Positions 27,909 through 64,000 of a stretch of DNA of 64,000 nt are shown here, piece by piece. The position numbers and the translations under genes are program-made. Position 1 is the stretch's first letter; every line of letters begins with the position of its first letter. The notes under the pieces were generated by a model. The model saw only the letters and a list, made by a program, of their open reading frames with translations, was not told the origin of the DNA and made no database searches. Location of the stretch: positions 245,178 through 309,177 of the IMG/VR virus record IMGVR_UViG_3300033995_001164; one strand, 5' to 3'.

Positions 27909-29625
27909 TTAACGACCTTTAATCATTGAAATCCCGTGTTTTAAGAATTCTTTTGCCCGCGGGGACACATGATTCATTAAATAAACCTTTTCAATGTCTT
28001 TAACTAATTCCTCCCCATGCTCATTTTCTTTATAAAGTTCAATAATTTTATCCATCGCTTTATTACATTCTTTTTTTGTTTCGTCAAAATAGTTGTAAGG
28101 TTTGAATGATTTAAGATGGTTCATGATTTCTGATGCCAGATGTTCACCACCATCAGAAACTTTTGGATGCAATCTAAGTGTTTTCAATAGTTCTAATCTA
28201 TCAACTAAACCATTAATACCGTTTTTCCTAATTGACACTCCCTCAATATAATCTTCCGCGTCGTCATCTCCCATAATCTCGTCTAATGACCTAACATTTC
28301 CACCATGGCAGAATTTTCTATCTTCTTTTTCTTCAGATTGTTCCATCATGTAAAGTTTTTTGATGGATTTAATTTCTGATTCTGTAATTGTAAATCTTTT
28401 AGTTCCCATATCTATAAATATAATGATAAATATATCGTTACTTCGTAAGTTTAAAATTAAAATAAAATAACTCCTTGTTGGAGAGGTTATCTTTTAATAT
28501 AATTTTTGAGAATCATTGAAAAGTCTTTTCATTTTAGATTCAATTAAATTTATTTTTTCTTGGTCCGAGTCGGAAACTTCAAAATTCTCCGCCTTAATTT
28601 GTCTCACTTCTTCTTGCATTCTTTGATATCTCATTATCATATCATTATACAATCTTGCCTTTTCGTCTTGGGTTAAATTTGCCATAGTTTTGTGTTTTTT
28701 TATAAATGTATAATTATTTCTTAAATTGTAATTAGTTATTCTCTTTTTTATGTTTTTTCCATTCTAACCAAAACGCAACCATAACTAAAATATTCATTCC
28801 ACAAGATGCAATAATTTCATAAATGTCTTTATATAGATTCATTGTTAGATGAACGTGACCAACAACCCAAAATGGAACTGCCAAATTGGAACCTACCCAA
28901 ACAATAAGATATTTAAGGAATCTTATATTGTTATTTATCATTTCGTTCAATTATATTAAAGTCAGTATCATACATTCTGTACCTAAAACCAGTATTGTCG
29001 TTATTGATACCAATATAAGGTAATAATTTTCTAATATGATGGTCAATTAAATAATATTGGTCTAATTGAAATTTATCCCAATAATTATCTCTATTTACTT
29101 CAGGGTCATTCAAATAAATGTCTAAAATTAACCAATCACTTGTAATACTACTTTCACTTTCAAAATAATGAACATCTATATTTCCAATAACAGGATATAT
29201 GTTTTTTATAATATCACTATTGAGTAGTTTTTGTAATGATTTTCTTTGATTTATATCTATCATATGTAATATTCTATTGTGTTAACAGGTATCTTGAAAG
29301 TTTCAACAAACCATTCTTTAAATCCTTCTTTCCAATTATCATTAAAATAACCTTCTAATGAGTTAAGAAGTCCTTGGTCTTCAACATACAACATTGGACT
29401 TAATGGTTTTCGGTAATCTGATGCTCCGGTCCAATAGTCTTCACCATATAACCTGAACAATGTTTCATCATCCATATAATCACCTAAATAAAATTCAATT
29501 GCGTCTTGTTCCTGACCCCAATCATCAGTTAAACGAGTCCAATTAATATTTTCAATATCCAAAGTGTTGTTTAGGTAATTTTTAACCGTTTGATTTAATT
29601 TACTTTCTGTTATAATGTATTTCAT
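27909..29625 (-). CDS. five small genes (27909-28409, 28494-28685, 28732-28950 membrane, 28931-29263, 29260-29625); first and last carry ITE leaders
   Basis: ORF track; MGTKRFTITESE and MKYIITESKL. Confidence 0.6.
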
Positions 29626-29634
29626 AATTTACTT

Positions 29635-29852
29635 AATTTGTATTGTTCCTCCACCAGACTTTTTTTTCCGAAATAAATCAATGTGGGTTGTTGTCACCTC
29701 CAATTTGTAATGTTCCTCCACCTTTTTCCTTTTTCGATGTAACGCAAAAGCGTTGTTGTCACCTCCAATTTGTAATGTTCCTCCACCAATAAACACGGCT
29801 CAAATATTCATCAATAGTTGTTGTCACCTCCAATTTGTAATGTTCCTCCACC
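29635..29852 (-). CRISPR. CRISPR-like array beginning inside the 3' end of gene 29759-30106
   Basis: Three identical 36-bp repeats GTTGTTGTCACCTCCAATTTGTAATGTTCCTCCACC (29687-29722, 29752-29787, 29817-29852) plus a partial copy at 29635-29655; unique spacers of 31, 29 and 29 nt. Confidence 0.85.
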
Positions 29853-30106
29853 CACGCTTTCGTTAGGTCTTCTATTTCCTCATTATTTAACTCAAAAAAG
29901 GATTTCAAAAATGACCAAATATGAGTATAAGAGACATGAGCAACCCCATTTTTTTCATTATAGTCAAACATAACTTCACCATCTTTCATAAAGAATATGT
30001 GGTTAGGGTATTCGTCTGTTTTATATGGTTTCAAATCACCATATTCGGTGTTAAGGTATTTGAGAATACCTCGATTTTTTTGACTTTCTGTTATAATGTA
30101 TTTCAT
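29759..30106 (-). CDS. ITE-leader protein whose C-terminus is encoded by repeat plus spacer
   Basis: ...WVEEHYKLEVTTT (repeat) IDEYLSRVY (spacer) WWRNITNWR* (next repeat, shifted frame). Confidence 0.8.
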   Translation of the reverse strand: MKYIITESQKNRGILKYLNTEYGDLKPYKTDEYPNHIFFMKDGEVMFDYNEKNGVAHVSYTHIWSFLKSFFELNNEEIEDLTKAWVEEHYKLEVTTTIDEYLSRVYWWRNITNWR

Positions 30107-39327: not shown

Positions 39328-42300
39328 TTAAATAACTTCCTTTACATTATATTTGTTACTAATCTTAAACCATTTTGAAATAAGATTGAAATAATTATTC
39401 TCAATAAATTTTGCGCCGAACCGTTTCCCTAATTCAAGTTTAACTTTATCCGAACTATAAATTGTTTCTGTCTTAATATCAAACAGAAAATAATTATTAG
39501 TCCAAGTTTGCTCCGCCTTATCGTATGTCATGTAGGGATAACCATATTTATCCTCAATCATTTTTACAATTTCTTTTTCAATTTTTGTCATCTAATATGA
39601 ATGAATTTATTTTTACTTGTCTAAACTCTCCTTTGGTTAACGTGCTATTAAATTGATATTCATCAGTTATTACATCATAAAACATTTTCCCTAAACTTCT
39701 TATCTCTTCAACAAGTAAATCTTCGGGGTCCGGGTTGGGATAAAATAAATTACCAAGTCTCCAAAATTCATTCCAATTATTATCTACTTTTTGTTTAAAA
39801 CATTTTTCAAGTTTTAACTTACTCATTATCAATTTAATTGTAAATAATGTTGAATATTCTTCAAAATCTCCAATATTAGGAGACGCTCCGATAATATAAG
39901 GGTATTCTTTACTTAAAATTTTAACCATCATATCTAACCCTTTTTGTTGGTCTTCAGTTAATCCCATTATTATTTATTTTTCACAAAGATATGGAATTGA
40001 ATTATTATTTACAAAAAAAAATAGGAAATAATGTGGTATTTATTATTATGGAACAAGAATTAAAAATCGTGCGTAAATTATTAGATAACTTCATACTTCC
40101 CAAATTTGAAGATGTTGTTGAATACGAATTAAAACATCGAAAAGACATTAACGGAGATAAAGTTCAAATTGAATTTTTAATGGACGGAACCGAACAAGAT
40201 ATTGAAGAGGAAATAGTTGAGGAATGTTATAACCTTTTAAAATATTATGATTTACCAAATCTCCGACTCGGTCTTAGATTTACAACCGATGGTGAGAATT
40301 TTTACGAATACAATTAAAAAAACCCTATCAATTATGATAAGGTTTTTTTATTAAAGTTCTTTTTTTAAACGACTAAGAATTTCATTGTTCTTATTCATTC
40401 TTTTTAAATCTTTTAGAGTGTTTGCTCTGTTCTTTTTTGGTTTCCCGGGTTTTCTTGATTTTGACATGATTAGTATTTGACAATAAATACCATTAAGGTA
40501 CAATTAATTCTCTACTTCCCATATCTTCATGAATCTCACGACAAATACTAATAATCTCTTTTGTATTGAGTCCCAAATAAGTAAATAGGTTAAACATTTT
40601 ATCGGAGGTACCCATAACACGAGAATAATAACCATATTCTCTATCTATTAAAAGTCTGATGGGTAATTTATCCATAAATTTGTTCCTCTCCGTGGGGTTC
40701 AATATTAACTGAATTTTATCGATGTTTCGGTATTTAATACCAATAATGGTGGCACTCTCCACTTCAAAAAAGGTTAAAAATAATTCTTTATTTGTCATAT
40801 CCAATTTCTTTACCGAATCTTTTGATAAACCAATCATGTATGACCCGATAATAATTACCAGGGCCAAACCAAGCAAATAAATCCGACTCAACATCAATAT
40901 ACCATCTTAATTCTTTTTCCAATATATTATAATCAAATAAATCATTAAGGATATAATCATTTCGTTTCTTAGTTAGAGATAAACTACCATACTTATCTTC
41001 CAAATATTTTTCTATTAAATCTATATTCATGGGACAAAGATAGAAAAAAAAATCCCACCGGCAATGGGTGGGATGAATATTTTTTTATTAATATTGTTGG
41101 GGGTCGTAAAAAAAAGTGTTTTCTAACCATTCATTTTTACCTAAAACATATTTTGATAAATTCTTAATTTTATCTTTTAATATGTTTTCGTCAGTTTTAT
41201 TAAGATTTAGTAAATCGTTATGTTTCATACCAATACCTACCCGATATACAATAAAATCACCAAGGTCAGATGGTTCTACTACAATATCTTTAATCTGAGG
41301 ATATTCATCCTTCAACATTGTAAGTAATAATTTTTTTAACGAAGTTTCAATCATATATATAAATACCGTTAATTGGATTAATCTTCATCAATTGTCAAGC
41401 AAAGTATTACAAATAGATATCCTAAAAATAATAATCTAAAAAACATTTTTGTTGGTCCATCTATTGGACTATCATTTCCTTTAGGAACACTCCAAGTCAC
41501 AAAAATAGTGCCTAAATAAAGAATTAGTAATAGAAACCCAATGATTAAGAACCCTCCAATAAAATTACGGATGTATCGATACATGAAAGTTTCCTTTATA
41601 TTTTCAAATGATATATTATCAAATGGGAACATTGAGGACGTTACCGATTCAAATACGGTTTTTACAGTTTTTTTACTGGTGTCAATCACTTTTTTTTCCT
41701 CAGGAGTCCATCCTTTTTTATAAGTCGCCATAGATTATTTTTTGACAAATATATGAAAAAGTTTTTATATAAAAAAATTCAATCAATATTTATCAGTATG
41801 ACAGTAGAAGAAGCAAAATATTATTTAAGTAATATGGGTTTATCATCTTGTTCCTGTGGATATGGTGGAGTTCAAGAGATGATTGAAGTTGCTATTCTAT
41901 TGAGAGATGGGGATAAAAAAACCCACCTTTAATGGGTGGGATTTAGATTATTTTTTCTTAGATTTTTCTTCCACTAATGGTTTTGAATCTCCAAGTTTTG
42001 AATTAATCAATTTAGAGAAATTCTCGGTCATGACTTTCATTCCTCCGGTGTGTTGTTCAAGGATACTATTTTTCTCCTCAGCAGATAAATTATTTAATAT
42101 GTGTTTCATTTGTTATTTTATTATAAGTATCTTGTTATAATGGAAAATATTTGCTCAGTGTCTGGTTATAATAGAAAATAAAGGACAATTATACTTAATT
42201 TTCTCTTTTTAGTGGAAAATATAGACTTATGAGAAACGCTCAATTCTAAATCGAATAACTTTTTGATTATATTTTTCATTAAACCATTTCATCACAAGAC

Positions 42301-44321
42301 CACTAATTATTCCTTCTTTTTCTATTCCAAATAAATCTATCATAGAATTAAAAAGTTTCTCAGTCATAATTAGATTCTCCGAATTTGGGCTGACAGAAAA
42401 AATAACGGTTATGTCGTCTTCAGATGGGACATATAATCTATATCCACCCATAACCGCACTTACCAAATTACCGTAATTATCACTCAACCAATTTTCAATT
42501 ATTGAGGTTAATCTACTTTCAGTTATAATGTATCTCATGATTCACAAGGTAATGGACTTACATAATGTCCAACAAACATATAAATTCCCAAATAATTGTT
42601 TATTTTTTCTTTAAGTTCCTTTGCATATTTACGAATTTTAGCGTTTTTTAAATCTTTTTCAATAGGGTTTTTAGTATACCAATCCTTATCGATAATTAAA
42701 TAACAATGAAAATTGTTATCTTCCTCGTCATATCCAACATCTAACTCACAAATACCTTCCATATCCATGGAATTATAGAATTTTCGCACCATTCTGATAA
42801 TGGAACCGGGGTTATTTGTCTGAATTGTGGAGAATTGAGACTCTGTTATAATATATTCCATAATTATTTATTTTTTAATGAATTATAAATTGGTGACCTC
42901 AATATGACTGTTGAATCAAATTTATCCGCGGCATATTCTTTACATATGTTTGCAAACTCTGAAGTAGTGAATCCTAACATATTCAATGCAGTATAAAAAT
43001 CCTTATTATTAAAATTTAATATTTGAGTAGAAGTATCGAATTTAAATGCGACATTACCATCCTCATTTTTATATTCAAATAAAACATTTGGTGACTCCAT
43101 GGTTACCGGTCTACGCATGTGTTTTTTATAATCGGAATATATCATATCAAAATATTTAAATACCAATCGTTTCTTTTTATTCATAATGATAAATACTTAA
43201 AAGGTTAAAAAGAGTAATTATAAAACCATCGAAACCGGTAATTGATACCGGTGTTCAAACCACTCACCCAAAAGTTCTCTAAATTCAGTTCTACCAACAC
43301 TAAACATCGAATAGATGTTATGTTGTAGTAATTCGTTATAAAAAATCTGATTACACTCTGTTGAATACCCGAAAGCGTCCGAAAGGTTATCGGGTTTAAG
43401 CCAATTTTTGTGTTCTACATCCTCACACAGTTCCCCGTAACAAAAAGTATCAAAATATTTAAATACCAAATTTTTCATCCAACAAAGATAATAAAAAAAC
43501 CCTACCGATTAGAGTAGGGTTGTTATTTTATTAAGTTAATATAGTAAAAATTAAAGAAACCAATAAACCCGAAAGAAATCCAACTAATACCCCAACAAAA
43601 AAACCATAATTTTTAGTCGGTTCCGGTATAATCTCAATAGTTTTTGGTTTATTATATTTCTTTCGATAGTAAGGTTTTTTCTTTTTAACCGGTTTAGGTT
43701 CAACATTTTCTTGTAATTTTACTCTTTGTTCAGGAAACACAGTTGGTATATCCCTTTTTTCTTTATCGAAGAGCTCATCTTCGATGTGTTTGCTTAATTT
43801 TCTTGTCATCATTTATTTTAATTTCTTTTTATTTTTCACATTTACACACACCATCACCACCTTTATCGGGGTCACATACACATTCCTGTTTTGGGGTTCC
43901 AGTTTTTAAAGTGTAATCGGGGAATAATGACATTATTGATTTAATCTCATCAACTTTACCCGCACTATCAAAAATTGTAATAGTTTTTTCTTCTTTATTA
44001 ATTTTATATTCCATAATATTTTTTTTTTATTTAACCAATAATGAATAGTCTATTAAATTCTTTATCGTGTATTGACATGTAATATTTTATAAAGTCTTTT
44101 AATGTTTCTTCATTTAAACCAAATAGTGAAACAAGATAATCTATCATTATTGAACTAACTCGTAGTTCACCATTAGGAATTAATCTCATTCTTGCGGCAT
44201 ATCCATCATACCAGACCCAATGATTATCATTGGTATATTCAATACTGTATTTGTCATCCAAGAGATTTGAAATTATCTTAAATAATCTTTCTTGTTGGGT
44301 TTCTGTTATTATTATCTTCAT
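39328..44321 (-). CDS. cluster of small accessory genes (39328, 39578, 40493, 40788, 41088, 41378, 41948-42109, 42227, 42535, 42864, 43218, 43531, 43829, 44031 on minus; 40048-40317 on plus)
   Basis: Many share a ~90-aa domain ending in 'FG/FS...WF...Y/F'; several have their own promoter and terminator. Confidence 0.6.
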
Positions 44322-44361
44322 TCCAATAAATATTCATGAATCGGAGTTTCCTTAGGTAGGT

Positions 44362-45315
44362 CTAATTAATTTTAACACCCTTCTCAAGTGTTTCCTCAAG
44401 ATAATCTATAAAAGCTTTTGTTCTATCTTCTTTACCGTGATAATAATTACCATAACCTATTAGTTCTCCACTTTGGTCTGGTAATGGTTTTATTTCTTTT
44501 ACACCATTCTCAATTATATCACCAATCCAATCAACAACGACCTCATTCAATTTTTTTGTTTTTTTAACTCCATTTTTAATCACACCATCAATTCTTCCTT
44601 TGTGTTGATATACATCATAGTAAGTTTCATTAACACCCTTGTCAATCACCTTATCAATTATGTCTTCTCCCACATATTGTCGTGGGTTAGAACTTTTAAC
44701 ACCATTTTCAAGTGCATCATCAATGTCTCCGGTATATTCACGAGATTCTAATTTTGAAGTCATTTTCACTCCATCTTGTATGACAATTTCAATAACACAA
44801 GAACCATCCATTTGTAATGATTTGTTGGTTAGTTTCACCCCTTTAGTTTTCTTCACACCATCTTGTATGATGTCATCAACCTCACCTTCAGTAATGTTCA
44901 TTTCCAAACAGGTTTCTTTTACTCCGCCTTTAATAACATTTTCAACCCAACTTGTATTATCTTCCGGGTTCCAACAAGTTTCTTTAATCCCATTCTCAAA
45001 AACCTCCATCAGATTATATGATGGTGTTTGAGATGGTGACGCGGTATTCTTAGAACCATTCATTACATTATCTTCTACCCATTTTGTGATGAGGTGTTGG
45101 TTTTGAACAACCTCCAATGAGGCATACCCAAAAAGATTTTTAAAGAAATTAAAATTATACCACAGGGTTTTACTTTCAGTTAATTCTATCACCCATTGTT
45201 TGGACTCCGTAAAGATTAACCAAGTGGAACCATTATGATTATATGTGTCAACACCTTGGACAGAAGAATTAATTAAGGTGTTTATTATTTTTCCCATAAT
45301 CTTTTTATTAGACAT
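44362..45315 (-). CDS. homologue of the 62683 family with about 9 degenerate ~22-aa C-terminal repeats
   Basis: N-terminal WLIF..KQWVIEL..LWYN domain, then [V/I]xxxxxxG[V/I]KxT plus ~10 variable residues. Confidence 0.75.
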   Translation of the reverse strand: MSNKKIMGKIINTLINSSVQGVDTYNHNGSTWLIFTESKQWVIELTESKTLWYNFNFFKNLFGYASLEVVQNQHLITKWVEDNVMNGSKNTASPSQTPSYNLMEVFENGIKETCWNPEDNTSWVENVIKGGVKETCLEMNITEGEVDDIIQDGVKKTKGVKLTNKSLQMDGSCVIEIVIQDGVKMTSKLESREYTGDIDDALENGVKSSNPRQYVGEDIIDKVIDKGVNETYYDVYQHKGRIDGVIKNGVKKTKKLNEVVVDWIGDIIENGVKEIKPLPDQSGELIGYGNYYHGKEDRTKAFIDYLEETLEKGVKIN

Positions 45316-46127
45316 TATTTTTAAATATATTTGGTTGAATCTCAGCATCTTCAAAAGATTCTGTGGATACAAACTCACTTTTCAAATAATTAATTACATG
45401 TTCCATCATCTCGTAATCTTTAAAATCTCCGTTTTTATGTCCAGCCTTCATTAATAAAGACATACCCGCAGCCAACATCATTGTTGATTCCTTAACAGAT
45501 AATGCCTCTTGGTCTTTTGGGAATCCAATGTCAAAGTAGTTTCTATCGTTTTCACGTCTCCACGTTACACCAATTGTTAATCCATCCATTTGTTTCTTTT
45601 TTATTTGACAAAGATACGAATATTATTTTATATTTCCAAAAAAGTATGAGCAATAAAAAACCCACTGATTTGTGATAGGATTAATAATCCAATAAGATTC
45701 TTTGTATTCATAGCACACAAATCCCTCAATGGAATTATTTAGAACTTTATTAATTAACTTTTTCAAACAGTTCAAAGAATTTATCCTTATTGTTTTTTTC
45801 AGGGGGGAATATAAATGACTGAACATGGAATGATACAAATCCCATCTCACTACCGTAAGTCATTTTAAAATAATCATTAATCTCCGTACTATATTCATGT
45901 TTACTTTTCTTCATTCCATTGTGGTTATCAAAATGGATGTCAACTCCAACCAAATATTTATATATCGGGGAGAAGTTTATTGGGTCATATATAATTTGTT
46001 CCCTATATCCTGTGGAAACAACATCAATAATCTCGGGGCACATCTTCAGTATGACAACCTTTAATGTATCGGGGACTTCAATTTTCTTATCGTTCGGGGA
46101 TGGAAATAAAGTATCTTCATTTTTCAT
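45308..46127 (-). CDS. three hypothetical proteins (45308-45589, 45623-45850, 45750-46127)
   Basis: ORF track. Confidence 0.5.
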
Positions 46128-46177
46128 ATACTACTTTTTTACAAAGATATAACAAAGATTCCACATAACCAAAAAAA

Positions 46178-46240
46178 GGGTTGGGATTCCATCGAACGAA
46201 GTGAGTGACCGGACGAAGTGAGTGACCGGACGAAGTGAGA
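46178..46240 (-). repeat. dispersed intergenic element, copy 1 of 5, with an internal 17-bp tandem repeat
   Basis: GGGATTCCATCGAACGAAGTGAG core; other copies at 48545-48585, 49996-50030, 50579-50620, 51362-51402. Confidence 0.9.
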
Positions 46241-46648
46241 CTACTCCCGCCCCCACCCATAATGAACCACCTCCCCATCAATATATTCCTTCCAAGTTTT
46301 ATTCCATGGACCGGAAAACAATACGGTCATACATCCGTTACTATTAGAAATCCGGTGATATGAATCCCGGGGAAAATAAACCAAGACTTTCTCCCTACGA
46401 ACAATACGATATTCTCCACTAACCTCATCATCCAAGATTTGTTCATCATACTCACCAAACAGTTTCACAGACCACGCATTAAAAGCGTGGGTATGAAACC
46501 GGTCCTGACTACCAAGAGATTTATGAAAATAAAAAAAGATGATGGAGAATAACCACTTACACTCAAAGACCACGAATTGACTAACGACCTGTTCCCCGAA
46601 CTCGAACTTATTGTATTTTAGAAATGAAATTGTTTTTGTTTTTACCAT
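46241..46648 (-). CDS. cupin-like protein
   Basis: RFHTHAFNAWS..GEYDE..YHRI. Confidence 0.6.
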   Translation of the reverse strand: MVKTKTISFLKYNKFEFGEQVVSQFVVFECKWLFSIIFFYFHKSLGSQDRFHTHAFNAWSVKLFGEYDEQILDDEVSGEYRIVRREKVLVYFPRDSYHRISNSNGCMTVLFSGPWNKTWKEYIDGEVVHYGWGRE

Positions 46649-46773
46649 AATGAATATACCTTATGGAATAAAAGTATAATTCTAATTTATGGTTATGTCA
46701 AATAAAAAACCCCAAATCTAATTAAAGAAATGGGGTATGTTTAAAAACATATTGGTAACATTTTTTTTTTGTG

Positions 46774-47058
46774 TTTAAATTGTAATGATTCCCAACTTGC
46801 TCCCCTGTTAGAGTTAAAATGTTATGTTGTGACTATCTTTCAAATTGTGATGATTCCCAACTTTGAATTTCGTTGAGGCTAACTTACAGCGGTTGCGACT
46901 ACCTTTCAAATTGTGATGATTCCCAACTCAAAATGTTATTCAATTGGGGATTTTATGTTGTAACTACCTTTCAAATTGTGATGATTCCCAACCCTATTAA
47001 CGAGGTTTATATCGGTGTCCTCGTTGTGACTACCTTTAAAATCGAGACACATCCCAAT
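46774..47058 (-). CRISPR. CRISPR array associated with the TnpB/Cas12-like gene
   Basis: Consensus (+) GTTGTGACTACCTTTCAAATTGTGATGATTCCCAAC at 46826-46861, 46892-46927, 46957-46992; half-degenerate copies at 47023-47058 and 46774-46796; spacers 29, 30, 29 and 30 nt. Confidence 0.92.
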
Positions 47059-47255
47059 AATGGCTTTTCAAATGAAATTGTGATAGTCTATCCGTTCTCG
47101 GATAATGAGGTTTTGAGACCCCTAGCCGCCTAACCGTTCCGGCAATCACACGTTGACCGTGTTCTTTTACCCGGGTTATATCTGCATACAGTGTTTTAAC
47201 CTTTTAACGTGTTACACACACGCGAGTTACCAATATGTTTAAGAACTTTTTTATT
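47059..47255 (-). ncRNA. putative omegaRNA/tracrRNA-like scaffold
   Basis: Non-coding and GC-richer; hairpin 47089-47104; 47141-47150 reads UGUGAUUGCC on minus and can pair with repeat GGUAGUCACA. Confidence 0.7.
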
Positions 47256-47261
47256 ATGATA

Positions 47262-47269
47262 CAAAGATA
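47262..47269 (-). promoter_or_regulatory. TATCTTTG box driving the scaffold and array
   Basis: 5 nt after the nuclease stop codon, pointing into the non-coding region. Confidence 0.7.
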
Positions 47270-47274
47270 AGTAA

Positions 47275-48477
47275 TTATTCTCTAACTAACAAACTTTCTC
47301 TGATATTTTTTGCTGCGTTTATATCTCTATCGTGGTGTTCCTCACAAGACTTACAGGTCCATTCCCTTTGGGATAACTTTAACTCAGTATTTATATCCCC
47401 ACAGTTAGAACAAGTCTTACTTGTATTACGGGGGTCAATCCTATTAAATTCAATTCCTTTTGAATTACAAACACTTCCCAAATAATCGACAAATGAACGA
47501 ATCCCGATTCTTGCAGTGGATTTAGCCATATGTTTATTCTGTAACATAAATGACAAACGAATATCCTCAACTTGTATTTTAGAAAACTTACCTTTAGTTA
47601 AAACACCAACAACATATCTGTGATATTCTTTTCTAATATTATTTAATTCATTCTGTAATCTACCCTTCTTCTCAATTACTCTCCAATAATTTTTGGATTT
47701 AGGTTTACCCTTGTTTAATCTGTTCTTACGAGATATACTCTTTTGAATAATTGAAATCTTATCTTCCAATTTTTTAATCCTCTCAATTGGTACCTGATAT
47801 TTAAGTCCTTCGGATGTAATTGCCATATCTTTAATACCTACATCAATTCCCAATGATTTACCCGAACTATTAATCTTAACAATTTCAGTATCCTTTAAAT
47901 CCAATGTTAAAGATAAATACCAATTACCATCAGACTTCCTATGGATTGACATTAACTTTGGTGTAGACCCTTTGAATTGTTTATGAAACTTACATTTTAT
48001 AATTGGATTTATCCCAACTTTTTTAAGTAAAGTAGGAGCAAACCTAATTTCATTATTATCCCAATCCAAACTTAAACTTCCACGACTAATACTATTTGAA
48101 TTAGTCGTTAATTTCAATATATTCGTTTTTTTCTTATACGAAGGTTTTCTTGATTTTGGTTTTTTTCTGAAATTTTTAATTGATGTGACCAAAGATTCAG
48201 AAACATATTCCCTAAATATTGATGGAACATTATCAAACCAATTAATCGTTGAAAGATAATTAGAGAAAAGAGATTTACTCTTTAAGTTCGGAGCAGGAAA
48301 GTCCTTAAAATCTTTCCCATCAATAAATTCACTAACCAAAAGATTATATCCCCCTCTTAATTTATTACCAATATCAAATAACCATCTCTTTTGTTTATCA
48401 TCCGGGTATATCCTATACTCAACTGATACTCCAACATAAGATGGACCCTTTTTTCTTTCAACCAAAAAATGATTCAT
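47275..48477 (-). CDS. tnpB: TnpB/Cas12f-like RNA-guided nuclease, 400 aa
   Basis: YRIYP N-terminus, RuvC-I GIDVG, RuvC-II VED, zinc finger CSNC/CKSC, RuvC-III DRDINAAKNI; start 48477 follows TATATTTG at 48497-48504. Confidence 0.93.
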   Translation of the reverse strand: MNHFLVERKKGPSYVGVSVEYRIYPDDKQKRWLFDIGNKLRGGYNLLVSEFIDGKDFKDFPAPNLKSKSLFSNYLSTINWFDNVPSIFREYVSESLVTSIKNFRKKPKSRKPSYKKKTNILKLTTNSNSISRGSLSLDWDNNEIRFAPTLLKKVGINPIIKCKFHKQFKGSTPKLMSIHRKSDGNWYLSLTLDLKDTEIVKINSSGKSLGIDVGIKDMAITSEGLKYQVPIERIKKLEDKISIIQKSISRKNRLNKGKPKSKNYWRVIEKKGRLQNELNNIRKEYHRYVVGVLTKGKFSKIQVEDIRLSFMLQNKHMAKSTARIGIRSFVDYLGSVCNSKGIEFNRIDPRNTSKTCSNCGDINTELKLSQREWTCKSCEEHHDRDINAAKNIRESLLVRE

Positions 48478-48598
48478 ATATAATTTATTTAGAAAGCAAA
48501 TATAAAACAAAGAATTCAAATCACCAAATATATAATGAAAAAAAGGAATGGGATTCCCTCGAACGAAGTGAGAAACCGGACGAAGAGCACTATACGAA

Positions 48599-49929
48599 TT
48601 ACTCATCAGCAGGGATATTATTTAACCAATTATTAAAATATTGTGAAGTATCCACATGATTTAATCCAAATAGTTTTCTTATACTATTGTATAACTCAGA
48701 CTTCATAGATATTTTACTAACACTATGTGGTCTCGAACCAACCTTAACTCCATTCACAATATAATAATAACTAAACATCTTAAACGCCCTCTCAAAATGG
48801 TTACTCTCTTTCGATACCGATAAGGTGGGGTTATCACCAACAATAGAATTAAGATATTCATGAACCAATTTTTCCATTATGTTGTTTCATTAATATCGGA
48901 CATCACATAACCTTCAGGTGGAAAATGAACCAAACATCTTCCACTCTCTTTATAACAAGTACAATCCAATTCATCATCAATCTCAAATGAAGCACTGCTC
49001 ACCTTATCTTCGTAATTTGTGAAGAAATCATTAAAGATTCCCGTAATGGTCATTTTCTTTTTCACCTTACTTATTTTTTGAATAGTGAAACCCTTTGAGG
49101 GTCTATTGTTATCACAATGTTATTACTTGAATCCGCATACGAAGCAATGTCATCATCCAATAACATTTTATGGATATTATCATCATAATAAATCACCACA
49201 TCATTGTATGAGTAATGTGGGTAATGATTTTTGATTGGTTCCAATAGAACAACATCAGTACATTGACTAATGGCACCGTCCATAATGGATTTAATTAGTT
49301 CATAATAATATTGATTTCGGTTTTTCTTATACTCGTTCAATATATCAATTCGAGATAAGGGTTCAGTTGTTTTTGGTTTGGAGTTCCACATCATTTTTTA
49401 CTATTTCTATTAATTTTTTAAGACATTACATATTAAAGCTAACAATGGTAATGATAAGAGTAATAATGAAATTACTAACCCCCAATAATCTTTTATTTTT
49501 TGCATATTTCTATTAATTTTTTAAGTTTTGCTTCTTAACAATTTCTATCAACTTGACCAAACATTCAAGTTCTGCTTCTTCGTAAGTTTGAAAAAAAGTA
49601 TCCCATATTAATCCGCCTATTCTAAAATCACTATTATATTCAGTGATATTATCTTGGATATACCAACAATAAGGTTGTTGATATTTGTTTTCTTTAGTAA
49701 TCCAACTATCTAAATTATACTTCTCTCTAAACCATCTAAATGCTTGTTGGTAAAGTGGTGCTACAAATGTTGTTTTAGATTCTAATCTAAATTGAAAAGG
49801 AGCAGATATAGTTTCATTTGATATATAAACCTCTCTATCTTTACCTACATAATATCCTAAACAAGGTTCATCAAATCCTAATTCTTTTAAAGCTAATGCT
49901 TGTTCGTAAGGTATAAATTCTTTTTCCAT
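48599..49929 (-). CDS. four hypothetical proteins (48599-48877, 48877-49065, 49071-49394, 49513-49929)
   Basis: ORF track; 49513 has LKELGFDEPC..APLYQQAFRWFREKY..YEEAE. Confidence 0.6.
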
Positions 49930-54772: not shown

Positions 54773-55825
54773 ATGAATAAACCCACCCATCCTGAAATTA
54801 TTGAGAAAGTATTGCTTCGTCTTATTAGAACGGAGTATCCTTCCGTGGAGGGAACAAGGATTGTTCATATATTTGGTAAGGGCTACAGTAAATATCATGT
54901 TTATGTTGGGGTGAGTTATACGGATGTTATTAGAAATAATTACTCTGAGTTTATACCATATGTTAATAACTTAGGTAAATACATTTTACCTCATCCGGAT
55001 ATTATTAAAGTCGTGGGATTTTATACTATATCTGAGTAATCTATTATATGGTCCGGGGCGTTAATCCCCAACCCCTTATATTTATTTAGTATGAAATATA
55101 TTATACCCGAAGAAAAACTTAAGAAACTAATTAAGTCATACATTATGTCTCGTTACAATTCAGTTAGTAAGGTTTACTTTACAAAAAGAAATGTTCATAC
55201 ACCGAGTTTTTTTGAAGGTAATCCCGTTCGAAACATTACTTTAACAATTATTAATATTGAGTTTAATTCCGGTGAGATGGTTCACGGTTATTTAAGTGCA
55301 TCACCATCCCGAACTTTAAGAACAATTCAAAACGATATTAATTCCATGTTTAATCTTGGTATTGGTGACGGCCCCTATTCTTTATGGGATGTTGATGGAA
55401 CTGTGGTTCATTAATCTATTATATGGTCCGAGGCGTTAATCCCCAACCCCTTATATTTATTTAGTATGAAATACATTATAACAGAAAACCAATTAGATAG
55501 ATTCATTAGTAAATGGTTATCCAAGGAATATGCAGATTTGGAAATTTATGACCACGATAATCAACTTTGGTGTTTATATGTTGATAAAGATGGTGAGGTA
55601 ATATTTCTTTATCATACCAAAGACAATGAGTTGTATGTCTCAAAGGATGTTATGAAATTTTTAATCGATATGTTTTCCATTGATGTCGAACAGACTAAGG
55701 ACATACTTAGAGAATGGTTTGAAAAGTACACCGGTTTGAATTCTTATAAGGTTTTATCTTGGGATTTTTTTGATGCGGATTGGAAAAAAATTGTTAGATG
55801 GGAAACAAAAAAACGATTATCTTAA
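54773..55825 (+). CDS. three small genes (54773-55039, 55091-55414, 55466-55825); last two with MKYII leaders
   Basis: ORF track and promoter boxes. Confidence 0.65.
55037..55098 (+). repeat. 62-bp promoter module duplicated at 55412-55473; related copy at 59697-59725
   Basis: TAATCTATTATATGGTCCGRGGCGTTAATCCCCAACCCCTTATATTTATTTAGTATGAAATA, one mismatch between copies. Confidence 0.9.
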
Positions 55826-55864
55826 ATTAAAAACCCCCACCGTTAAGTGAGGATTTTCTTTTTG

Positions 55865-57486
55865 TTACAAACAATCTTTACAATATTTCCATTCTATAAC
55901 TCTCTCACCATCCTCAAAAGTTTTACTACCATTATATGAACACCATTTGTCGTCAGCATAATAAACAACCTCATACCATTCAGAAACACCTAAATCATTT
56001 ATATGAGTTATTTTAGCCAAAACAGAATCTAATTCAGTAGGTGTTTCTTGTTTCCCAACGTGAGTAATTGTAATACCTCTTTCAAGCTCTTGTTTAGGTT
56101 CTTCTTTTGGAATGATGATTTTGTATATCCAAGTGTGATATATGGTTTTATAACTATCAATCTTAACCATCTCACAACTTGGATTTTTAACAAACCATTC
56201 TAAAAACTCATTATCAATAGCTTGTACACCATCATTGATTAATTCTTGGTCTGTTGTTAGGATGATTTTTTTGGCACCATTAAATTTTGTAAAAATTTTA
56301 TCAGTTTCTTGTTTATAAACAACATTATGTTTATCAATACACCAATCTCCATATTTAATATCTTCATCAGAAGTGATGTAGATGTGTTGTCTATTAGATA
56401 AATTATAAATATCAGAACAAAATGTTAGTTCTTCTTTTGATGTAGATTTTGATAACCTACTTGGTTTATCTGTTGGTATTACGTGTATGTTTTTCATAAC
56501 TTTATTTTCTTTTTAAATTGTTCAAACCATTTTTTCAAAGTTACAAATGTCATAATACTTTTTTCATCTTCTTTGATATATTCCATTGCATTTTGATTGA
56601 AATTTTGTAGTAATTCTAATACTTCTTCCTCACTATAACTTCTTTTTTCAAGTTCAGAAATATATCTCAATACACTGATTGGAACTTTCATATAATCTTC
56701 TTCGGCATTAGCTCTGTAATATGTTAAATCTTTAGTTTCTTCAAAATCTTCCAAATTCCATTTAGAAGTGTTAATTACAAATTCTCTTTTAACTCCAATA
56801 CCTTTTTTTAAAGATTTATTTAAGAAATCAACTTCTGTTAATTGTTGCATATCCTTAAAAGGTTTAGGTTCTTGTTTAGGTTTCACTAACTTGTTTGCAG
56901 TTTCTCTTACTTTTTGTTTAATAGATTCAGGTGTTTCATAAAGGATTCTATCTTTAGTTGATTGTTTAGGTTTACCAACTACCATATCTATTTTACCTTT
57001 AGGTATTCCTCTTAATTCCTTTTTATGTTCGCATTTATCACAACCATAGAAGGCACCACAACATTTCCATTCTTCTTTTGGAATGATGATTTTGTAATCA
57101 TATAATTCTGAAGTAAAATGTTTGTATTCTTTTTCAATTTCAACCTCCTCACAATTTGGATTCTTAACAAACCATTCTAAAAAATCATTTGGAATAGGTT
57201 GTACACCATCTTTAATAAGGTCTTGGTCTGTTGTAAGAATGATTGAAAAATAATTAGTATATACAGGAGTTCTCATTTTCATAAATTCTCTGTATTTGTA
57301 AACTTTACCTTCCCAAAAAACATAACCTTCTTCTTTAATTTCTTCATCAGAAGTGATGTAGATGTTTACATTATTTCCTAATGCTTCTTTGATAGGTTTT
57401 ATATCGTGACATCTTGTTAGATTACCTAATTTAGTCATCCAAAACCTACTTGGTTTATCTGTTGGTATTAAGTGTATGTTTTTCAT
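55865..57486 (-). CDS. two tandem mosaic paralogues (55865-56497, 56494-57486)
   Basis: Shared blocks MKNIHxIPTDKPSR, IYITSDE, IILTTDQ..DGVQ..FLEWFVKNP, YKIIIPKEE. Confidence 0.75.
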
Positions 57487-60092: not shown

Positions 60093-60641
60093 ATGACAGA
60101 TAAACTAAAGCATAGAATCATTAACTACCTAAATAAAGAATATTCCGGGATTGTTGATTATGAAACGGATGATTGGAAAGAGCATATATTCTTTATGAAA
60201 GACGGGAAAGTTCTTAATTATTACAGTAAAATAAATGGGGTTGTTTATATCTCTTATTCTAAAATTTGGTCATTATTAGAAACCTTTTTTGGATTAAATT
60301 ATCAGGAAGTACAAGACCTAACAAAAATATGGGTGGAGGGGCATCACAGATTTAAGGTAACAACAACGGTCGAAGAAAGAGGAGAATTGATTGACTTGGT
60401 GGAGGAACATCACAGATTAAACGTAACAACAATCGTGCCGAATTGCTTTGTTCACTGGGACAAGGTGGAGGAACATCACAGATTAAACGTAACAACAACA
60501 AGACATGACCGTTATGGAAATGTTACACCGGAGGAACTTCACAAATTAAAGTCAACAACAACCTTCGGTTGTTTTATCGTTGATTTACCTTTGGTAGAAA
60601 ACCATTACAAATTAAACTACCCCGCTAACGGTGAAATATGA
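60093..60641 (+). CDS. 29759-family protein with a translated repeat-spacer tail
   Basis: Units VEEHHRLNVTTT plus 9-10 variable residues. Confidence 0.8.
   Translation: MTDKLKHRIINYLNKEYSGIVDYETDDWKEHIFFMKDGKVLNYYSKINGVVYISYSKIWSLLETFFGLNYQEVQDLTKIWVEGHHRFKVTTTVEERGELIDLVEEHHRLNVTTIVPNCFVHWDKVEEHHRLNVTTTRHDRYGNVTPEELHKLKSTTTFGCFIVDLPLVENHYKLNYPANGEI
60332..60617 (+). CRISPR. in-frame CRISPR-like array
   Basis: 36-bp repeats at 60332, 60398, 60464, 60527 and a partial at 60593; spacers 30, 30, 27 and 30 nt. Confidence 0.75.
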
Positions 60642-62171: not shown

Positions 62172-62696
62172 ATGGAAATAGATTTATCAAAATATAGTAT
62201 TGGGGAACTTATTGAATTACAGGACAAGATTGATAATACAATACATAACTACAAGGATGGTTATTTGTATATCTGTAATGTTCGTTCATATGGTCACAAT
62301 TGGAGAGACAATTGTATTCATAACATTCATACTCTTCAGCGACTTTGTCATAAGTATGGTGGTGAGGATGGTATTGTTGATGTCTATTCTAATAACCCCG
62401 ACCTTTCTATGATTGAGAACTATGGTGACCTTATGTATATCGTCTCCGAGTCCGACTATACTAAGTGGAAAGATTATGAATATCTTAAAGGTTTTATCCC
62501 CACCATTTCTAAACGATTGGATGAATGGGAGAATAGAGATAATATTCCTTTTCACTCTCGACCATCGTTTGCTCCGATGTATAGTAGAGAAGAGTTAAAT
62601 AATATGGTGGAAAAACTTGCTCACTATGATATGTCTTTTGTTGCTCCCACCCCTTATAAACCGAATGAAAATTTAGACACAGATGATTACAGATAA
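62172..62696 (+). CDS. hypothetical protein
   Basis: Start MEIDLS after the TATCTTTG box. Confidence 0.6.
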   Translation: MEIDLSKYSIGELIELQDKIDNTIHNYKDGYLYICNVRSYGHNWRDNCIHNIHTLQRLCHKYGGEDGIVDVYSNNPDLSMIENYGDLMYIVSESDYTKWKDYEYLKGFIPTISKRLDEWENRDNIPFHSRPSFAPMYSREELNNMVEKLAHYDMSFVAPTPYKPNENLDTDDYR

Positions 62697-63207
62697 ATTT
62701 AAAAGAACAATTTTTGATAAATTAACCGATGACCTATCTCATGTGGAATTGATTTTCTACAATGACTCCCTTTGGTTTATTAACCGAGAAAAGAAGTATT
62801 GGTATTTGGAATTAGAAAAATCAGGTAAATTATATTGGAGATGGCAATTCTTTACTAATTTTTTCTCTCCATTCACAATGGAACGAAATGAATATGAACC
62901 ACTTATAAAAGAATGGGTAGAGTCAGCATTAAATTGCGGGGTTACAACAACAGTAAACAAGGATTCAATCGCCGGATGGACGGTAGAGTCAGCATTAAAT
63001 TGCGGGGTCACAACAACTCAAATAGGCACCATCAAAAAACTGAAATGGGTAGAGTCAGCATTAAATTGTGGGGTGACAACAACGTTGTTGATGAAATTCC
63101 ACCAAAAACTATTGGTAGAGTCAGCATTAAATTGTGGGGTGACAACAACAGTACCATCTAAGTTATCCGTTGCAATAAAGGTGGAGTCAGTATTAAATGG
63201 ATTATAA
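62683..63207 (+). CDS. protein with a translated repeat-spacer tail
   Basis: Four units of VESALNCGVTTT plus 10 variable residues. Confidence 0.85.
   Translation: MITDKFKRTIFDKLTDDLSHVELIFYNDSLWFINREKKYWYLELEKSGKLYWRWQFFTNFFSPFTMERNEYEPLIKEWVESALNCGVTTTVNKDSIAGWTVESALNCGVTTTQIGTIKKLKWVESALNCGVTTTLLMKFHQKLLVESALNCGVTTTVPSKLSVAIKVESVLNGL
62916..63200 (+). CRISPR. in-frame CRISPR-like array
   Basis: GGTAGAGTCAGCATTAAATTGYGGGGTBACAACAAC at 62916, 62982, 63048, 63114 and a partial at 63180; four unique 30-nt spacers. Confidence 0.85.
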
Positions 63208-63272: not shown

Positions 63273-63734
63273 ATGATTACAGATAAATTTAAAAGAACAA
63301 TTTTTGATAAATTGAGTGAAGATTTATCCCATGTTGAGATAATATCATACCGTGATTCCTTTTGGTTTATTAACCGAGAGAAAAAATATTGGTATTTGGA
63401 ATTTAAATCTTCAGGCGAACTATATTGGAGATGGCAATTCTTTATTGAATTTTTTGAATTATTCACGATGGAGAGAAACCAATTCGAGCCAATCATATTA
63501 GAATGGGTAGAGAAAGTATTAAACCATGAGTTAATAACAACTGAAATCAATATTGGTAATCATGTAGGTATCGAAGAAGTCCTAAATGGCGGAGTGAAAA
63601 CATCGTATAGAGCAAATAAAGACGGATTTTTGGTGAGTTATATATTAAAGAAAGGTGTCACGGCAACCATTAGTAATCATATACGTGGTCTCAAATGTGT
63701 GGAGGAAATATTAAATAATGGAACAACAATATGA
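63273..63734 (+). CDS. paralogue of 62683 with decayed 21-22-aa repeats
   Basis: Near-identical N-terminus; VEKVLNHELITT, IEEVLNGGVKTS, VSYILKKGVTAT, VEEILNNG. Confidence 0.8.
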   Translation: MITDKFKRTIFDKLSEDLSHVEIISYRDSFWFINREKKYWYLEFKSSGELYWRWQFFIEFFELFTMERNQFEPIILEWVEKVLNHELITTEINIGNHVGIEEVLNGGVKTSYRANKDGFLVSYILKKGVTATISNHIRGLKCVEEILNNGTTI

Positions 63735-64000
63735 TTACAGATAAACTAAAACAATTTATTTTTAATAAATTAACCGATGACCTATCTCATGTGGAATTGA
63801 TTTCATATGAAGATTCCTTTTGGTTCATAGATAGAGAAAACAAATATTGGTATTTGGAATTTCAAAAGTCCGGCAGATTATATTGGAGATGGGGATTTTT
63901 TTCCAATTTTTTCCAATTATTTTGTATGGAAAGAGATGAATATGAACCACTTATCACCGAATGGGTGGAGTCAGTCCTAAATGGTGGGGTAACAACAACA
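63731..64000 (+). CDS. third paralogue, truncated by the window end; first repeat at 63964-63999
   Basis: MITDKLKQFIFNKL...EWVESVLNGGVTTT. Confidence 0.8.
   Translation, partial: MITDKLKQFIFNKLTDDLSHVELISYEDSFWFIDRENKYWYLEFQKSGRLYWRWGFFSNFFQLFCMERDEYEPLITEWVESVLNGGVTTT

What the first reader, a model, noticed from the sequence alone, without database searches (positions are those of the whole stretch)
44480..45080. Fossil array: about nine decayed 22-aa units suggest a repeat protein born from spacer arrays
Seen: the same N-terminal domain as 62683, followed from the same 'WVE' position by units such as VENVIKGGVKET + CLEMNITEGE. Most have period 22 and are diverged at DNA level. Gene 63273-63734 is an intermediate stage. 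Inference: an age series from perfect arrays (29.7 kb) to a domesticated repeat protein. The reverse direction, a coding repeat giving rise to the CRISPR repeat, is also possible.
Basis: inference. Interest (0 to 1): 0.65.

Follow-up and report, generated by a model that had tools for sequence, protein, structure and literature searches.

The report
Phage repeat protein from CRISPR-like arrays
A lake jumbo-phage gene encodes a folded head domain followed by nine 22-residue units, and its sister genes carry the same layout as live, in-frame CRISPR-style repeat-spacer arrays, so this protein family probably grew out of such arrays.

Summary
ORF 44362-45315(-) has a ~90-aa N-domain and then ten 12-aa cores. 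Six of the nine intervals between cores are exactly 22 aa, and conservation is at protein level only.

It belongs to a large unnamed family: 1711 hits, no Pfam, modal period 22 aa, with conserved and collinear linker cassettes.

Its paralogues (62683, 60093, 29759 and 50 IMG/VR loci) carry 36-nt repeats with 30-nt unrelated inserts, starting at the same WVE codon.
- The DNA unit is offset one base from the codon frame.
- Inserts are either identical or unrelated, lack phage codon bias, and are added at the N-domain end.
- The sense frame has 0 stops in 970 insert codons.

The repeats are related to a mini-array beside a TnpB gene (46761-47058). That array's repeat is 32/36 identical to Chryseobacterium type VI-B (Cas13b) repeats. 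The phage has no Cas1, Cas2 or Cas13b.

The N-domain tree places the finding's family inside the array-bearing clade.

Best reading: a domesticated, formerly growing in-frame CRISPR-like array, probably built by host Cas1-Cas2 acting in trans. The direction of descent and the protein's function remain inferred. No prior description was found.

The parts
44362..45315 (-). The gene of the finding (P0001, 317-318 aa): N-domain plus repeat region.
   Evidence: ORF and translation. An identical protein P0005 occurs on 39 contigs, and there are 1711 relatives.
45043..45315 (-). N-domain of about 90 aa (helix, four strands, two helices). Its last helix runs into the first core.
   Evidence: AF2 pLDDT 78-91 for residues 1-89 and 83-91 in P0122. 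HMM hit 1.5e-38. No PDB fold match: Foldseek E at least 0.4, VIA Z under 5.
44365..45078 (-). Repeat region: ten 12-aa cores (pattern h-x-D/E-x-I-x-N-G-V-K-E-T) separated by linkers. Core starts at aa 81, 103, 125, 147, 176, 199, 221, 243, 265 and 307.
   Evidence: Periods are 22, 22, 22, 29, 23, 22, 22, 22 and 42 aa. Core DNA identity is 59%, lowest at third codon positions.
62683..63207 (+). Paralogue P0002: N-domain, then four near-identical 36-nt repeats with 30-nt unrelated inserts, read in frame. The array spans about 62916-63200.
   Evidence: Relatives share the distal units but differ at the N-domain end.
63273..63734 (+). Paralogue P0003: N-domain plus four degenerate cores (an old array with no young units).
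   Evidence: P0147 shares its last linker and terminal core.
63731..64000 (+). A third clade-B paralogue, cut by the end of the window. Its array continues beyond the window.
   Evidence: table 5c. P0130 and P0132.
60093..60641 (+). Clade-A N-domain gene with an in-frame array. Repeats at 60332, 60398, 60464 and 60527, with periods 66, 66 and 63.
29620..30106 (-). Clade-A N-domain gene (29759-30106) running into three perfect 36-nt repeats plus one degenerate repeat. Periods are 65-67 nt, so the frame is lost after the first unit.
46761..47058 (-). Non-coding mini-array: three near-identical repeats, with one degenerate copy at the TnpB-proximal end and one truncated copy at the far end. Spacers are 29-30 nt. 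The repeat is of type VI-B kind.
   Evidence: The repeat is 32/36 identical to the Chryseobacterium sp. repeat that follows cas13b. It folds with a GUUG/CAAC closing stem. A terminator follows at about 46700-46735.
47059..48606 (-). TnpB-family gene (47275-48606) and a conserved ~215-nt non-coding stretch (47059-47274) that leads into the mini-array.
   Evidence: Pfam Cas12f1-like_TNB 2.5e-20. NCBIfam guided_TnpB 3.6e-54. The non-coding stretch is highly conserved, in long invariant runs, in L014, whose array has a different repeat.
44031..44321 (-). Stand-alone N-domain paralogue (clade A), directly downstream of the finding's gene.
45623..45850 (-). Short ORF holding only the first half of an N-domain (a truncated paralogue).
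   Evidence: E 2.5e-4.

Best explanation
**What the gene encodes.** Gene 44362-45315(-) encodes a phage protein with a folded ~90-aa N-domain. A string of nine further copies of that domain's last 12 residues follows, each trailed by a linker of about 10 residues.

**Proposed origin (inferred).** The string most likely began as an in-frame CRISPR-like array.
1. In this phage lineage, the 36 nt that encode the end of the N-domain resemble a Flavobacteriales type VI-B/II-C CRISPR repeat, including its leader-distal ACAAC end.
2. The host's Cas1-Cas2 is known to serve Cas1-less VI-B arrays in trans. I propose that it inserts 30-bp fragments there and duplicates the 36-bp segment, adding 22 codons per event next to the N-domain.
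3. Only insertions that keep the frame open to the gene's C-terminal end persist.
4. Old units lose DNA identity and come under protein-level selection.
5. The finding's family is that end state: a conserved protein whose cores probably form beta-hairpins with an N-G turn, displaying unrelated loops.

**Shown versus inferred.**
- Shown: the homology, the DNA-level nature of the repeats, polar growth of the young arrays, the open frame, and the link to VI-B repeats.
- Inferred: the enzyme responsible, the descent of this particular gene from a growing array, and the function. My guess at function is a loop-display scaffold among early or host-takeover genes.
For: **Homology and position**
- The N-domain is homologous and the cores start at the same W-V-E codon.

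**Paralogous arrays in 50 loci found through the N-domain alone**
- 116 of 118 periods are exactly 66 nt.
- The repeat unit is offset one base from the codon frame. The base before the first codon is G in 102 of 112 cases, and the last codon's third base is free.
- Third codon positions are conserved across 20 distinct arrays.
- Young repeats show no amino-acid constraint: 23 synonymous against 73 non-synonymous polymorphic sites.

**Inserts**
- Insert-to-insert identity is bimodal: random-like, or 27-30 of 30.
- Insert GC is 41%, with 43/38/42% at codon positions 1/2/3. The N-domain has 34/28/30%.
- Amino-acid composition is close to random.
- There are 0 stops in 970 sense-frame codons, against 4-9% in the other five frames. 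Only 1 of 47 arrays continues past its ORF.

**Polarity**
- In young arrays, unshared units number 72 on the N-domain side, 4 internal and 3 distal. Examples are P0130 = P0132 plus one unit, and P0128 versus P0002.

**Link to CRISPR**
- A weight matrix built from the coding repeats scores the TnpB-side repeats at 1 in 100,000 shuffles, in the sense orientation only.
- That repeat is 32/36 identical to a Chryseobacterium repeat lying next to cas13b.
- Bacteria with such arrays encode Cas1 at a different locus.
- In-trans VI-B adaptation and the shared ACAAC (GTTGT) motif are reported in PMC8092290.

**The finding's own family**
- It is nested in the array-bearing clade, with 100/100 support for the family itself.
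- Its modal period is 22 aa.
- Its cassettes are collinear, with 9.6% minority-order pairs, and mutually unrelated.
Against: - No DNA-level relic of a 36-nt repeat is left in this gene.
- Its linkers are conserved, widely shared cassettes, and many are 11-30 aa rather than 10 aa.
- The tree node is a polytomy with a long branch and only a midpoint root.
- No source (protospacer) was found for any insert, whether in the phage, in the fetched loci, or in IMG/VR for two spacers.
- The phage encodes no Cas1, Cas2 or Cas13b.
- The host is only inferred.
- The coding repeats lack the GUUG/CAAC stem of VI-B repeats, and no bacterial array with the coding-type repeat was found in 401 Flavobacteriales genomes.
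- Four lake runs from 2020-2024 show the same array without new units, although contigs hide rare variants.
Confidence: 0.55

Rival explanations
1. This is an ordinary protein tandem repeat. The 22-aa unit (a C-terminal hairpin plus loop) was duplicated inside the gene by slippage or unequal crossing-over, and the loops then diverged under selection. The likeness to the arrays reflects only the shared N-domain end.
For: - Conservation is strongly at protein level, with saturated third positions.
- AF2 predicts a beta-hairpin per unit in the regular family member P0122.
- Cassettes are conserved across hundreds of proteins.
- A few cassettes are related to each other: 25 pairs share 4-5 of 10 identical positions, against 4 expected.
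- Unit gain and loss with preserved order fits unequal recombination.
Against: - Nearly all cassettes are mutually unrelated, while the cores stay alike.
- The modal period equals 36+30 nt exactly, the unit that sister genes add by a DNA-level process.
- The family nests among array-bearing genes.
- Paralogues without arrays carry just one core.
Confidence: 0.25
2. The direction is reversed. A protein with 22-aa repeats like this one is ancestral, and the repeat-spacer genes arose later, when an integrase began to use the already repeated coding motif as a target.
For: - The finding's family is far larger in the word search (1711 hits against 63).
- The tree does not resolve the order of branching within clade B.
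Against: - Clade A, the other half of the family, consists mostly of single-core stand-alone genes, with young arrays on only a few. A single core is therefore the simpler ancestral state.
- The two searches cover different length windows, so the hit counts are not comparable.
Confidence: 0.12
3. The region is itself a working CRISPR array that yields guide RNAs, and the ORF is incidental.
For: The unit size is right, and related repeats in the same genome (46761-47058) look like working VI-B repeats.
Against: - The cores are only 59% identical at DNA level and have no conserved stem.
- Linker lengths vary from 10 to 30 aa.
- The ORF is conserved as a protein in 1711 relatives.
Confidence: 0.02

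Closest known systems
Type VI-B (Cas13b) CRISPR arrays of Flavobacteriales, which gain spacers in trans through type II-C Cas1-Cas2 (PMC8092290)
   Same: - 36-nt repeats with spacers of 29-31 nt.
- The same leader-distal ACAAC end.
- Growth at the leader end.
- The phage mini-array repeat at 46761-47058 is 32/36 identical to a Chryseobacterium repeat next to cas13b.
   Different: - The arrays lie in a phage that has no cas genes.
- Most start inside a protein-coding gene, are kept open in one frame, and lack the repeat's closing stem.
- The finding's own units are no longer DNA repeats at all.
Orphan mini-arrays and solitary repeat units (RNA anti-CRISPRs) on phages and plasmids (PMC10651486; PMC11656645)
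   Same: These are phage-borne copies of host-type CRISPR repeats without cas genes, and they may compete for host Cas proteins.
   Different: - That survey masked predicted ORFs and found no type VI case.
- Here the repeats are coding and translated through, and they grow to as many as 10 units.
Off-target ('neo-CRISPR') spacer integration by Cas1-Cas2 at repeat-like genomic sites. I cite Nivala et al. 2018 from my own knowledge; only its title phrase and the term 'neo-CRISPR' occurred in papers listed, which I did not open.
   Same: A repeat-like sequence outside a CRISPR locus is duplicated and receives a spacer. This seeds a new array.
   Different: That work was done in E. coli in the laboratory. 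Here the inferred events are natural, recurrent, located in a virus and inside genes, and their products appear to be retained as protein.
Beta-hairpin repeat proteins with units of about 20 aa (choline-binding and cell-wall-binding repeats, clostridial CROPs), cited from my own knowledge
   Same: The AF2 model of P0122 has one hairpin per short unit, stacked in series.
   Different: There is no sequence or Pfam match and no significant fold match. The model's confidence is low (pLDDT 45-57).
Multi-core peptide precursors with identical flanks and hypervariable cassettes (for example cyanobactin PatE-type genes), cited from my own knowledge
   Same: Constant segments alternate with unrelated short variable segments behind a leader-like N-terminal part.
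   Different: No processing enzymes were looked for or seen nearby. The variable parts here look like random DNA filtered only for the absence of stops, and the unit is set at DNA level.

Membership tests
CRISPR array (generic definition) | Near-identical direct repeats of 23-55 bp. | tested here: not met
   For the finding's gene, core DNAs are 59% identical. The feature is met for paralogues 62683, 60093 and 29759 and for the mini-array at 46761-47058.
CRISPR array (generic definition) | Unique spacers of constant length between the repeats. | tested here: inconclusive
   In the finding's gene the linkers are mutually unrelated, but they are 10-30 aa long and are conserved cassettes. In the paralogous arrays 116 of 118 spacers are exactly 30 nt, and they are either identical or unrelated.
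CRISPR array (generic definition) | Polar gain of new units at one (leader) end. | tested here: inconclusive
   Met in young paralogous arrays, where unshared units number 72 proximal, 4 internal and 3 distal. Degenerate arrays show no polarity (101/35/126). For the finding's family, only collinearity was shown.
CRISPR array (generic definition) | Adjacent or co-resident cas genes. | tested here: not met
   The 309-kb genome has no Cas1 above threshold, no Cas2 and no Cas13b. There is only a TnpB-family gene, next to the mini-array.
CRISPR array (generic definition) | Spacers that match foreign DNA (protospacers). | tested here: not met
   No match outside arrays in the phage's own genome or in the fetched loci. 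Two spacers scanned in IMG/VR hit only the phage's own arrays. The INPHARED search was blank. Bacterial genomes and metagenomes were not searched for spacers.
CRISPR array (generic definition) | Transcription and processing into guide RNAs. | not testable with these tools
   No run recorded as RNA holds the phage.
Type VI-B repeat family | A 36-nt repeat with a GUUG...CAAC closing stem, found next to cas13b in bacteria. | tested here: not met
   This is for the coding repeats and the finding's cores. They are related by weight matrix (1 in 100,000 shuffles) and keep the ACAAC end, but they form no closing stem. The feature is met for the mini-array repeat at 46761-47058 (32/36 identity plus the stem).
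Known repeat-protein families (Pfam, PHROGs) | A significant profile match to a curated repeat or domain family. | tested here: not met
   Pfam has nothing above its cut-offs (best hit IpaB_EvcA, 19 bits against a cut-off of 29.9). PHROGs has nothing below E 0.002. There is no PDB fold match, and the ESM Atlas search returned nothing useful.
The unnamed 'N-domain plus NGVKET-unit' protein family | The N-domain, then at least 7 cores with a modal 22-aa period, then a conserved C-terminal cassette ending G-V-K-I-N/K. | tested here: met
   There are 1711 hits. The top hits are 46-57% identical over 85-98% of the query. Cassette maps are shared.

The most novel reading that the evidence does not exclude
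The 3' ends of these phage genes act as decoy leader-repeat sites. They capture integration events of the host's CRISPR adaptation complex. The captured 30-bp fragments are translated as 10-residue loops, and over time they are fixed as parts of a new, widespread protein family. On this reading, CRISPR adaptation machinery would be a generator of new coding sequence in viruses, and possibly a sink that diverts spacer uptake away from the host's own arrays.
Probability: 0.35. Interest if true: 0.92.

Novelty: categorically new. Interest (0 to 1): 0.85.

Why it matters
If correct, this is a route to new proteins that has not been described. A ruler-type DNA integrase would add 22 codons at a time, made of a constant 12-codon segment and 10 codons of unrelated sequence, to a viral gene. 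Selection then keeps the reading frame open, and old units become a conserved repeat protein found in more than a thousand metagenomic sequences.

It would also add three things to what is known about CRISPR and phages:
- Phage-borne type VI-B-like repeats. A dedicated survey found no solitary type VI repeat units on viruses or plasmids, and it masked ORFs by design.
- A possible anti-adaptation decoy.
- A natural record of integration events in lake phage populations.

The idea is directly testable with Flavobacterium columnare-type hosts, in which in-trans VI-B adaptation can already be followed in the laboratory.

Tried and rejected
- **Family and fold searches.** Pfam and PHROGs scans of six family members found nothing significant. 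tblastn of the protein against INPHARED phages found no match. Rfam found no family, and no CRISPR-DR model, for the window or the mini-array. The ESM Atlas search returned nothing usable.
- **A diversity-generating retroelement as the source of the variable parts.** Rejected, because the inserts share no template-like positions.
- **Non-coding arrays whose ORFs are gene-caller artefacts.** Rejected. Loci found through the N-domain alone are open through up to 10 units, with 0 stops in 970 codons.
- **Amino-acid-level purifying selection as what keeps the constant segments identical in young arrays.** Rejected. The three synonymous-only differences in gene 62683 do not generalise: overall there are 23 synonymous against 73 non-synonymous sites.
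- **Self-derived spacers.** No match in the phage genome. Host-array spacers from four bacterial loci do not match the phage.
- **TnpB-linked arrays as a general rule.** Two distant TnpB loci (L015, L016) have no array. The putative guide after the conserved non-coding stretch has no second site in the genome.
- **Bacterial arrays with the coding-type repeat, or N-domain genes in bacteria.** In 401 Flavobacteriales genomes there were only single, chance-level pattern hits and two marginal protein hits.
- **New units in four lake runs.** None was seen, but Logan contigs break at the repeats and drop rare variants.
- **High weight-matrix hits at window 20119 and 27413.** Their ORFs are not N-domain genes.
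- **Literature.** Four searches found no description of in-frame or translated CRISPR-like arrays.
- **Not done or not applicable.** The large profile search of protein representatives was not run, because the word search already found the family.

Full report
**Setting.** The window is the last 64 kb of a 309,177-bp IMG/VR virus record, rated 100% complete by CheckV. The virus is a T4-like jumbo myovirus with about 30% GC.
- It encodes portal, sheath, major head and DNA polymerase proteins.
- Its major head protein is 42-46% identical to those of Microcystis phage Mel-JY01, Flavobacterium phage immuto and uncultured huge phages.
- Near-identical sequence is held by at least 24 lake-water metagenome runs from 2020-2024.

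**The observation.** ORF 44362-45315(-) encodes 317-318 aa.
- Residues 1 to about 90 are homologous to the N-terminus of gene 62683-63207: E 3.8e-13 by search of the phage's own genome and 1.5e-38 by a family HMM.
- From the shared W-V-E position onward I count ten 12-aa cores. Their window coordinates are listed under 'parts'. The intervals are 22, 22, 22, 29, 23, 22, 22, 22 and 42 aa.
- The core DNAs are 59% identical on average. Identity is highest at second codon positions and lowest at third (7.2, 9.2 and 4.9 of 12), so the repeat is conserved as protein only.

**The family of the finding.** The word-based protein search returned 1711 proteins at E up to 1e-3. They are 281-550 aa long, carry no Pfam domain, and are unnamed apart from a few automatic labels. 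That search sees only proteins of 0.55-1.75 times the query length.
- All have the same N-domain, 7-18 cores with consensus close to V-E-D-T-I-E-N-G-V-K-E-T, and a conserved C-terminal cassette.
- Of about 1320 core-to-core intervals, 697 are exactly 22 aa. Another 147 are 23 aa and 108 are 24 aa.
- The linkers fall into 254 clusters of conserved cassettes. Cassettes appear in largely the same order in different proteins, with presence or absence differences; only 9.6% of cassette pairs occur in the minority order.
- The 74 recurrent 10-aa cassettes are mutually unrelated. Their pairwise identity histogram matches shuffled sequences, apart from a small excess at 4-5 identities.

**Structure.**
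- AF2 folds the N-domain with confidence (pLDDT 78-91) as a helix, four strands and two helices. The repeat region of the finding's protein scores only 30-48.
- For the most regular member, P0122, AF2 draws one beta-hairpin per 22-aa unit, with the N-G pair at the turn, at pLDDT 45-57.
- Neither model has a significant PDB match.

**The paralogues are in-frame repeat-spacer arrays.**
- Gene 62683-63207 has four copies of a 36-nt segment separated by 30 nt of unrelated sequence, all in frame.
- Gene 60093-60641 has the same layout with another repeat.
- Gene 29759-30106 runs into three perfect 36-nt repeats with 29-nt inserts, which breaks the frame.

I collected 50 loci from IMG/VR using the N-domain alone, so the sample is not biased toward long ORFs.
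- The ORFs run through up to 10 units.
- 116 of 118 periods are exactly 66 nt.
- Only 1 of 47 arrays has further repeats beyond its stop codon.

**The repeat is defined at DNA level.**
- The base before the first codon of each later repeat is G in 102 of 112 cases.
- The third base of the last codon varies freely.
- The 36-nt unit is therefore shifted one base from the codon frame.
- Across 20 distinct arrays, several third codon positions are nearly invariant (GTG 18/20, AAG 19/20, xCA 20/20), although these codons are not the preferred ones in an AT-rich genome.
- Among young repeats, polymorphic sites are spread over codon positions 35/23/38, and 73 of 96 change the amino acid. Identity is thus kept by copying, not by selection on the peptide.

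**The inserts behave like spacers.**
- Pairwise identity is bimodal. It is either random-like (mode 8 of 30) or 27-30 of 30, with nothing in between.
- GC is 41% and flat over codon positions (43/38/42%), whereas the N-domain has 34/28/30%.
- Amino-acid composition is close to that of random DNA of the same composition.
- Yet the sense frame has 0 stops in 970 codons, against 3.9-9.2% per codon in the other five frames. About half of random 30-mers would be expected to be open.

Translation to the end of the gene is therefore under strong selection, while the peptide sequences themselves are not.

**Growth is polar.**
- P0130 equals P0132 plus one unit placed directly after the N-domain.
- P0128 shares the N-domain and the last unit with the window's gene, but its proximal units differ.
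- P0126 shares only the distal end.
- In pairs of young arrays that share a unit, the unshared units number 72 on the N-domain side, 4 internal and 3 distal. Fourteen of 15 pairs differ only on the N-domain side. These pairs are not independent of each other.
- Degenerate arrays show no such polarity.
- Within one gene, L024, two perfect proximal units precede degenerate distal units that are conserved in L053 and P0177. For that distal part pN/pS is 0.49, against 0.20 for the N-domain.

**Link to real CRISPR.**
- Downstream of a TnpB-family gene (47275-48606) lie a ~215-nt non-coding stretch, a mini-array (46761-47058, spacers 29-30 nt) and a terminator.
- A related phage, L014, has TnpB at 83% identity. 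It keeps the non-coding stretch in long invariant runs and keeps the distal flank, but its array has a different 36-nt repeat and different spacers.
- A weight matrix built from the coding repeats scores both of these repeats at 1 in 100,000 shuffles, and only in the sense orientation.
- A pattern derived from the mini-array repeat found genuine arrays in Flavobacterium columnare and F. covae (25/36 identity), Chryseobacterium ureilyticum (31/36) and Chryseobacterium sp. IT-36CA2 (32/36). Their spacers are 29-31 nt.
- In the last of these, the array directly follows a Cas13b gene (NCBIfam VI_Cas13b, E 3.6e-256).
- Those bacteria encode Cas1 at a different locus.
- According to PMC8092290, the F. 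columnare VI-B array gains spacers through the II-C Cas1-Cas2 in trans, is transcribed from the leader end, and shares with II-C repeats only the leader-distal GTTGT motif. That motif is the reverse complement of the ACAAC end, which is almost invariant in the phage's coding repeats.
- The phage itself has no Cas1, Cas2 or Cas13b.
- Host VI-B repeats and the mini-array repeat fold with a GUUG/CAAC closing stem. The coding repeats do not. They may therefore still be integration targets without being good Cas13b guides.

**Phylogeny.** An N-domain tree of 47 sequences splits into two clades (97/88 support).
- Clade A holds mostly stand-alone genes of about 95-130 aa with a single core. It also holds the two array genes at 29759 and 60093.
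- Clade B holds only array-bearing genes.
- The finding's family forms a long-branched group (100/100) inside the clade-B polytomy.
- The root is at the midpoint only, and many forks are unresolved.

**Interpretation.**
- What is shown: the finding's repeat is homologous, in position and motif, to 36-nt DNA repeats. Those repeats grow by polar insertion of unrelated 30-nt fragments, are kept open for translation, and are related to type VI-B CRISPR repeats of likely hosts.
- What is inferred: host Cas1-Cas2 does the inserting, the finding's gene once grew this way, and its present role is that of a loop-displaying hairpin scaffold.
- Alternatives: plain tandem duplication, or the reverse order of events. 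These cannot be excluded with the present tree.

**What is known.** A survey of solitary CRISPR repeats in viruses masked ORFs and found no type VI case. Four literature searches gave no description of translated repeat-spacer arrays. I therefore rate the phenomenon as new, while the descent of this one gene remains a well-motivated inference.

**Limits.**
- No protospacer was found.
- There is no expression data.
- The four lake runs show a stable array, but only as contigs.
- The host assignment rests on repeat similarity alone.

Noticed in passing
window 46700-48606 (-); L014:2525-4300: There is a conserved module here: a TnpB-family gene, a ~215-nt non-coding stretch, a CRISPR-type mini-array and a terminator. 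In a phage whose TnpB is 83% identical, the flanks show long invariant runs, but the array has a different 36-nt repeat and different spacers. Conservation of the non-coding stretch ends where a TnpB guide would begin, and repeat-like sequence follows. The element may therefore have inserted into, or may target, such arrays.
   Followed up: partly
window 46745-46759 and 47226-47240: A perfect 15-nt inverted repeat brackets the non-coding stretch plus the mini-array, with 466 nt between its arms. It is also conserved in L014. It might form a long-range RNA stem or mark the ends of an element.
   Followed up: no
window 46196-46239: A perfect 17-nt tandem repeat (2.6 copies) spans the stop codon of ORF 46241-46648, about 0.5 kb beyond the mini-array. 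A 16-nt stretch next to it (46174-46189) is 88% complementary to the start of the mini-array repeat.
   Followed up: no
window 29620-29852 (-): The array behind gene 29759-30106 has perfect repeats but 29-nt inserts (period 65). The protein therefore ends 19 codons after the first unit. This is a rare frame-broken case among otherwise open arrays.
   Followed up: partly
L084 (CALRTD020000104.1, labelled as a Synechococcus sp. UW140 MAG), about 1900-2300: An array of at least six VI-B-type repeats (29/36 identical to the phage mini-array repeat), with GC-rich spacers, lies next to a tyrosine integrase and an HTH gene on a 10.5-kb contig. It may be a mobile element, or a contig binned with the wrong genome.
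   Followed up: no
window 32834-33059, in ORF 32393-33421 (-): A 120-nt tandem duplication (1.9 copies, 83% matches) lies inside an ORF that carries a NUMOD3 motif, which suggests a homing-endonuclease-like protein.
   Followed up: no
window 42227-45850 and 55466-59536: There are many stand-alone paralogues of the N-domain: 42227-42538, 43218-43478, 44031-44321, 55466-55825 and a half-domain at 45623-45850. One copy forms the C-terminus of the 458-aa ORF 58160-59536. Across the whole genome, 16 ORFs match the family HMM at E below 0.01.
   Followed up: partly
genome 202754-205570 (L068), outside the window: The portal protein ORF (939 aa) carries an HNH-endonuclease-like segment at residues 195-283, ahead of the portal domain.
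   Followed up: no
genome 81291-81454 and 164452-164540, outside the window: Two large ORFs contain long Pro/Thr-rich low-complexity runs with 54-66-nt periodicity. My repeat screen picked them up, but they are unrelated to the arrays.
   Followed up: no
window 9714-10895 (+): This ORF is a T4 Rnl1-type RNA ligase (Pfam RNA_lig_T4_1, E 1.2e-19). It may be of interest because the likely hosts use an RNA-cutting CRISPR system.
   Followed up: no
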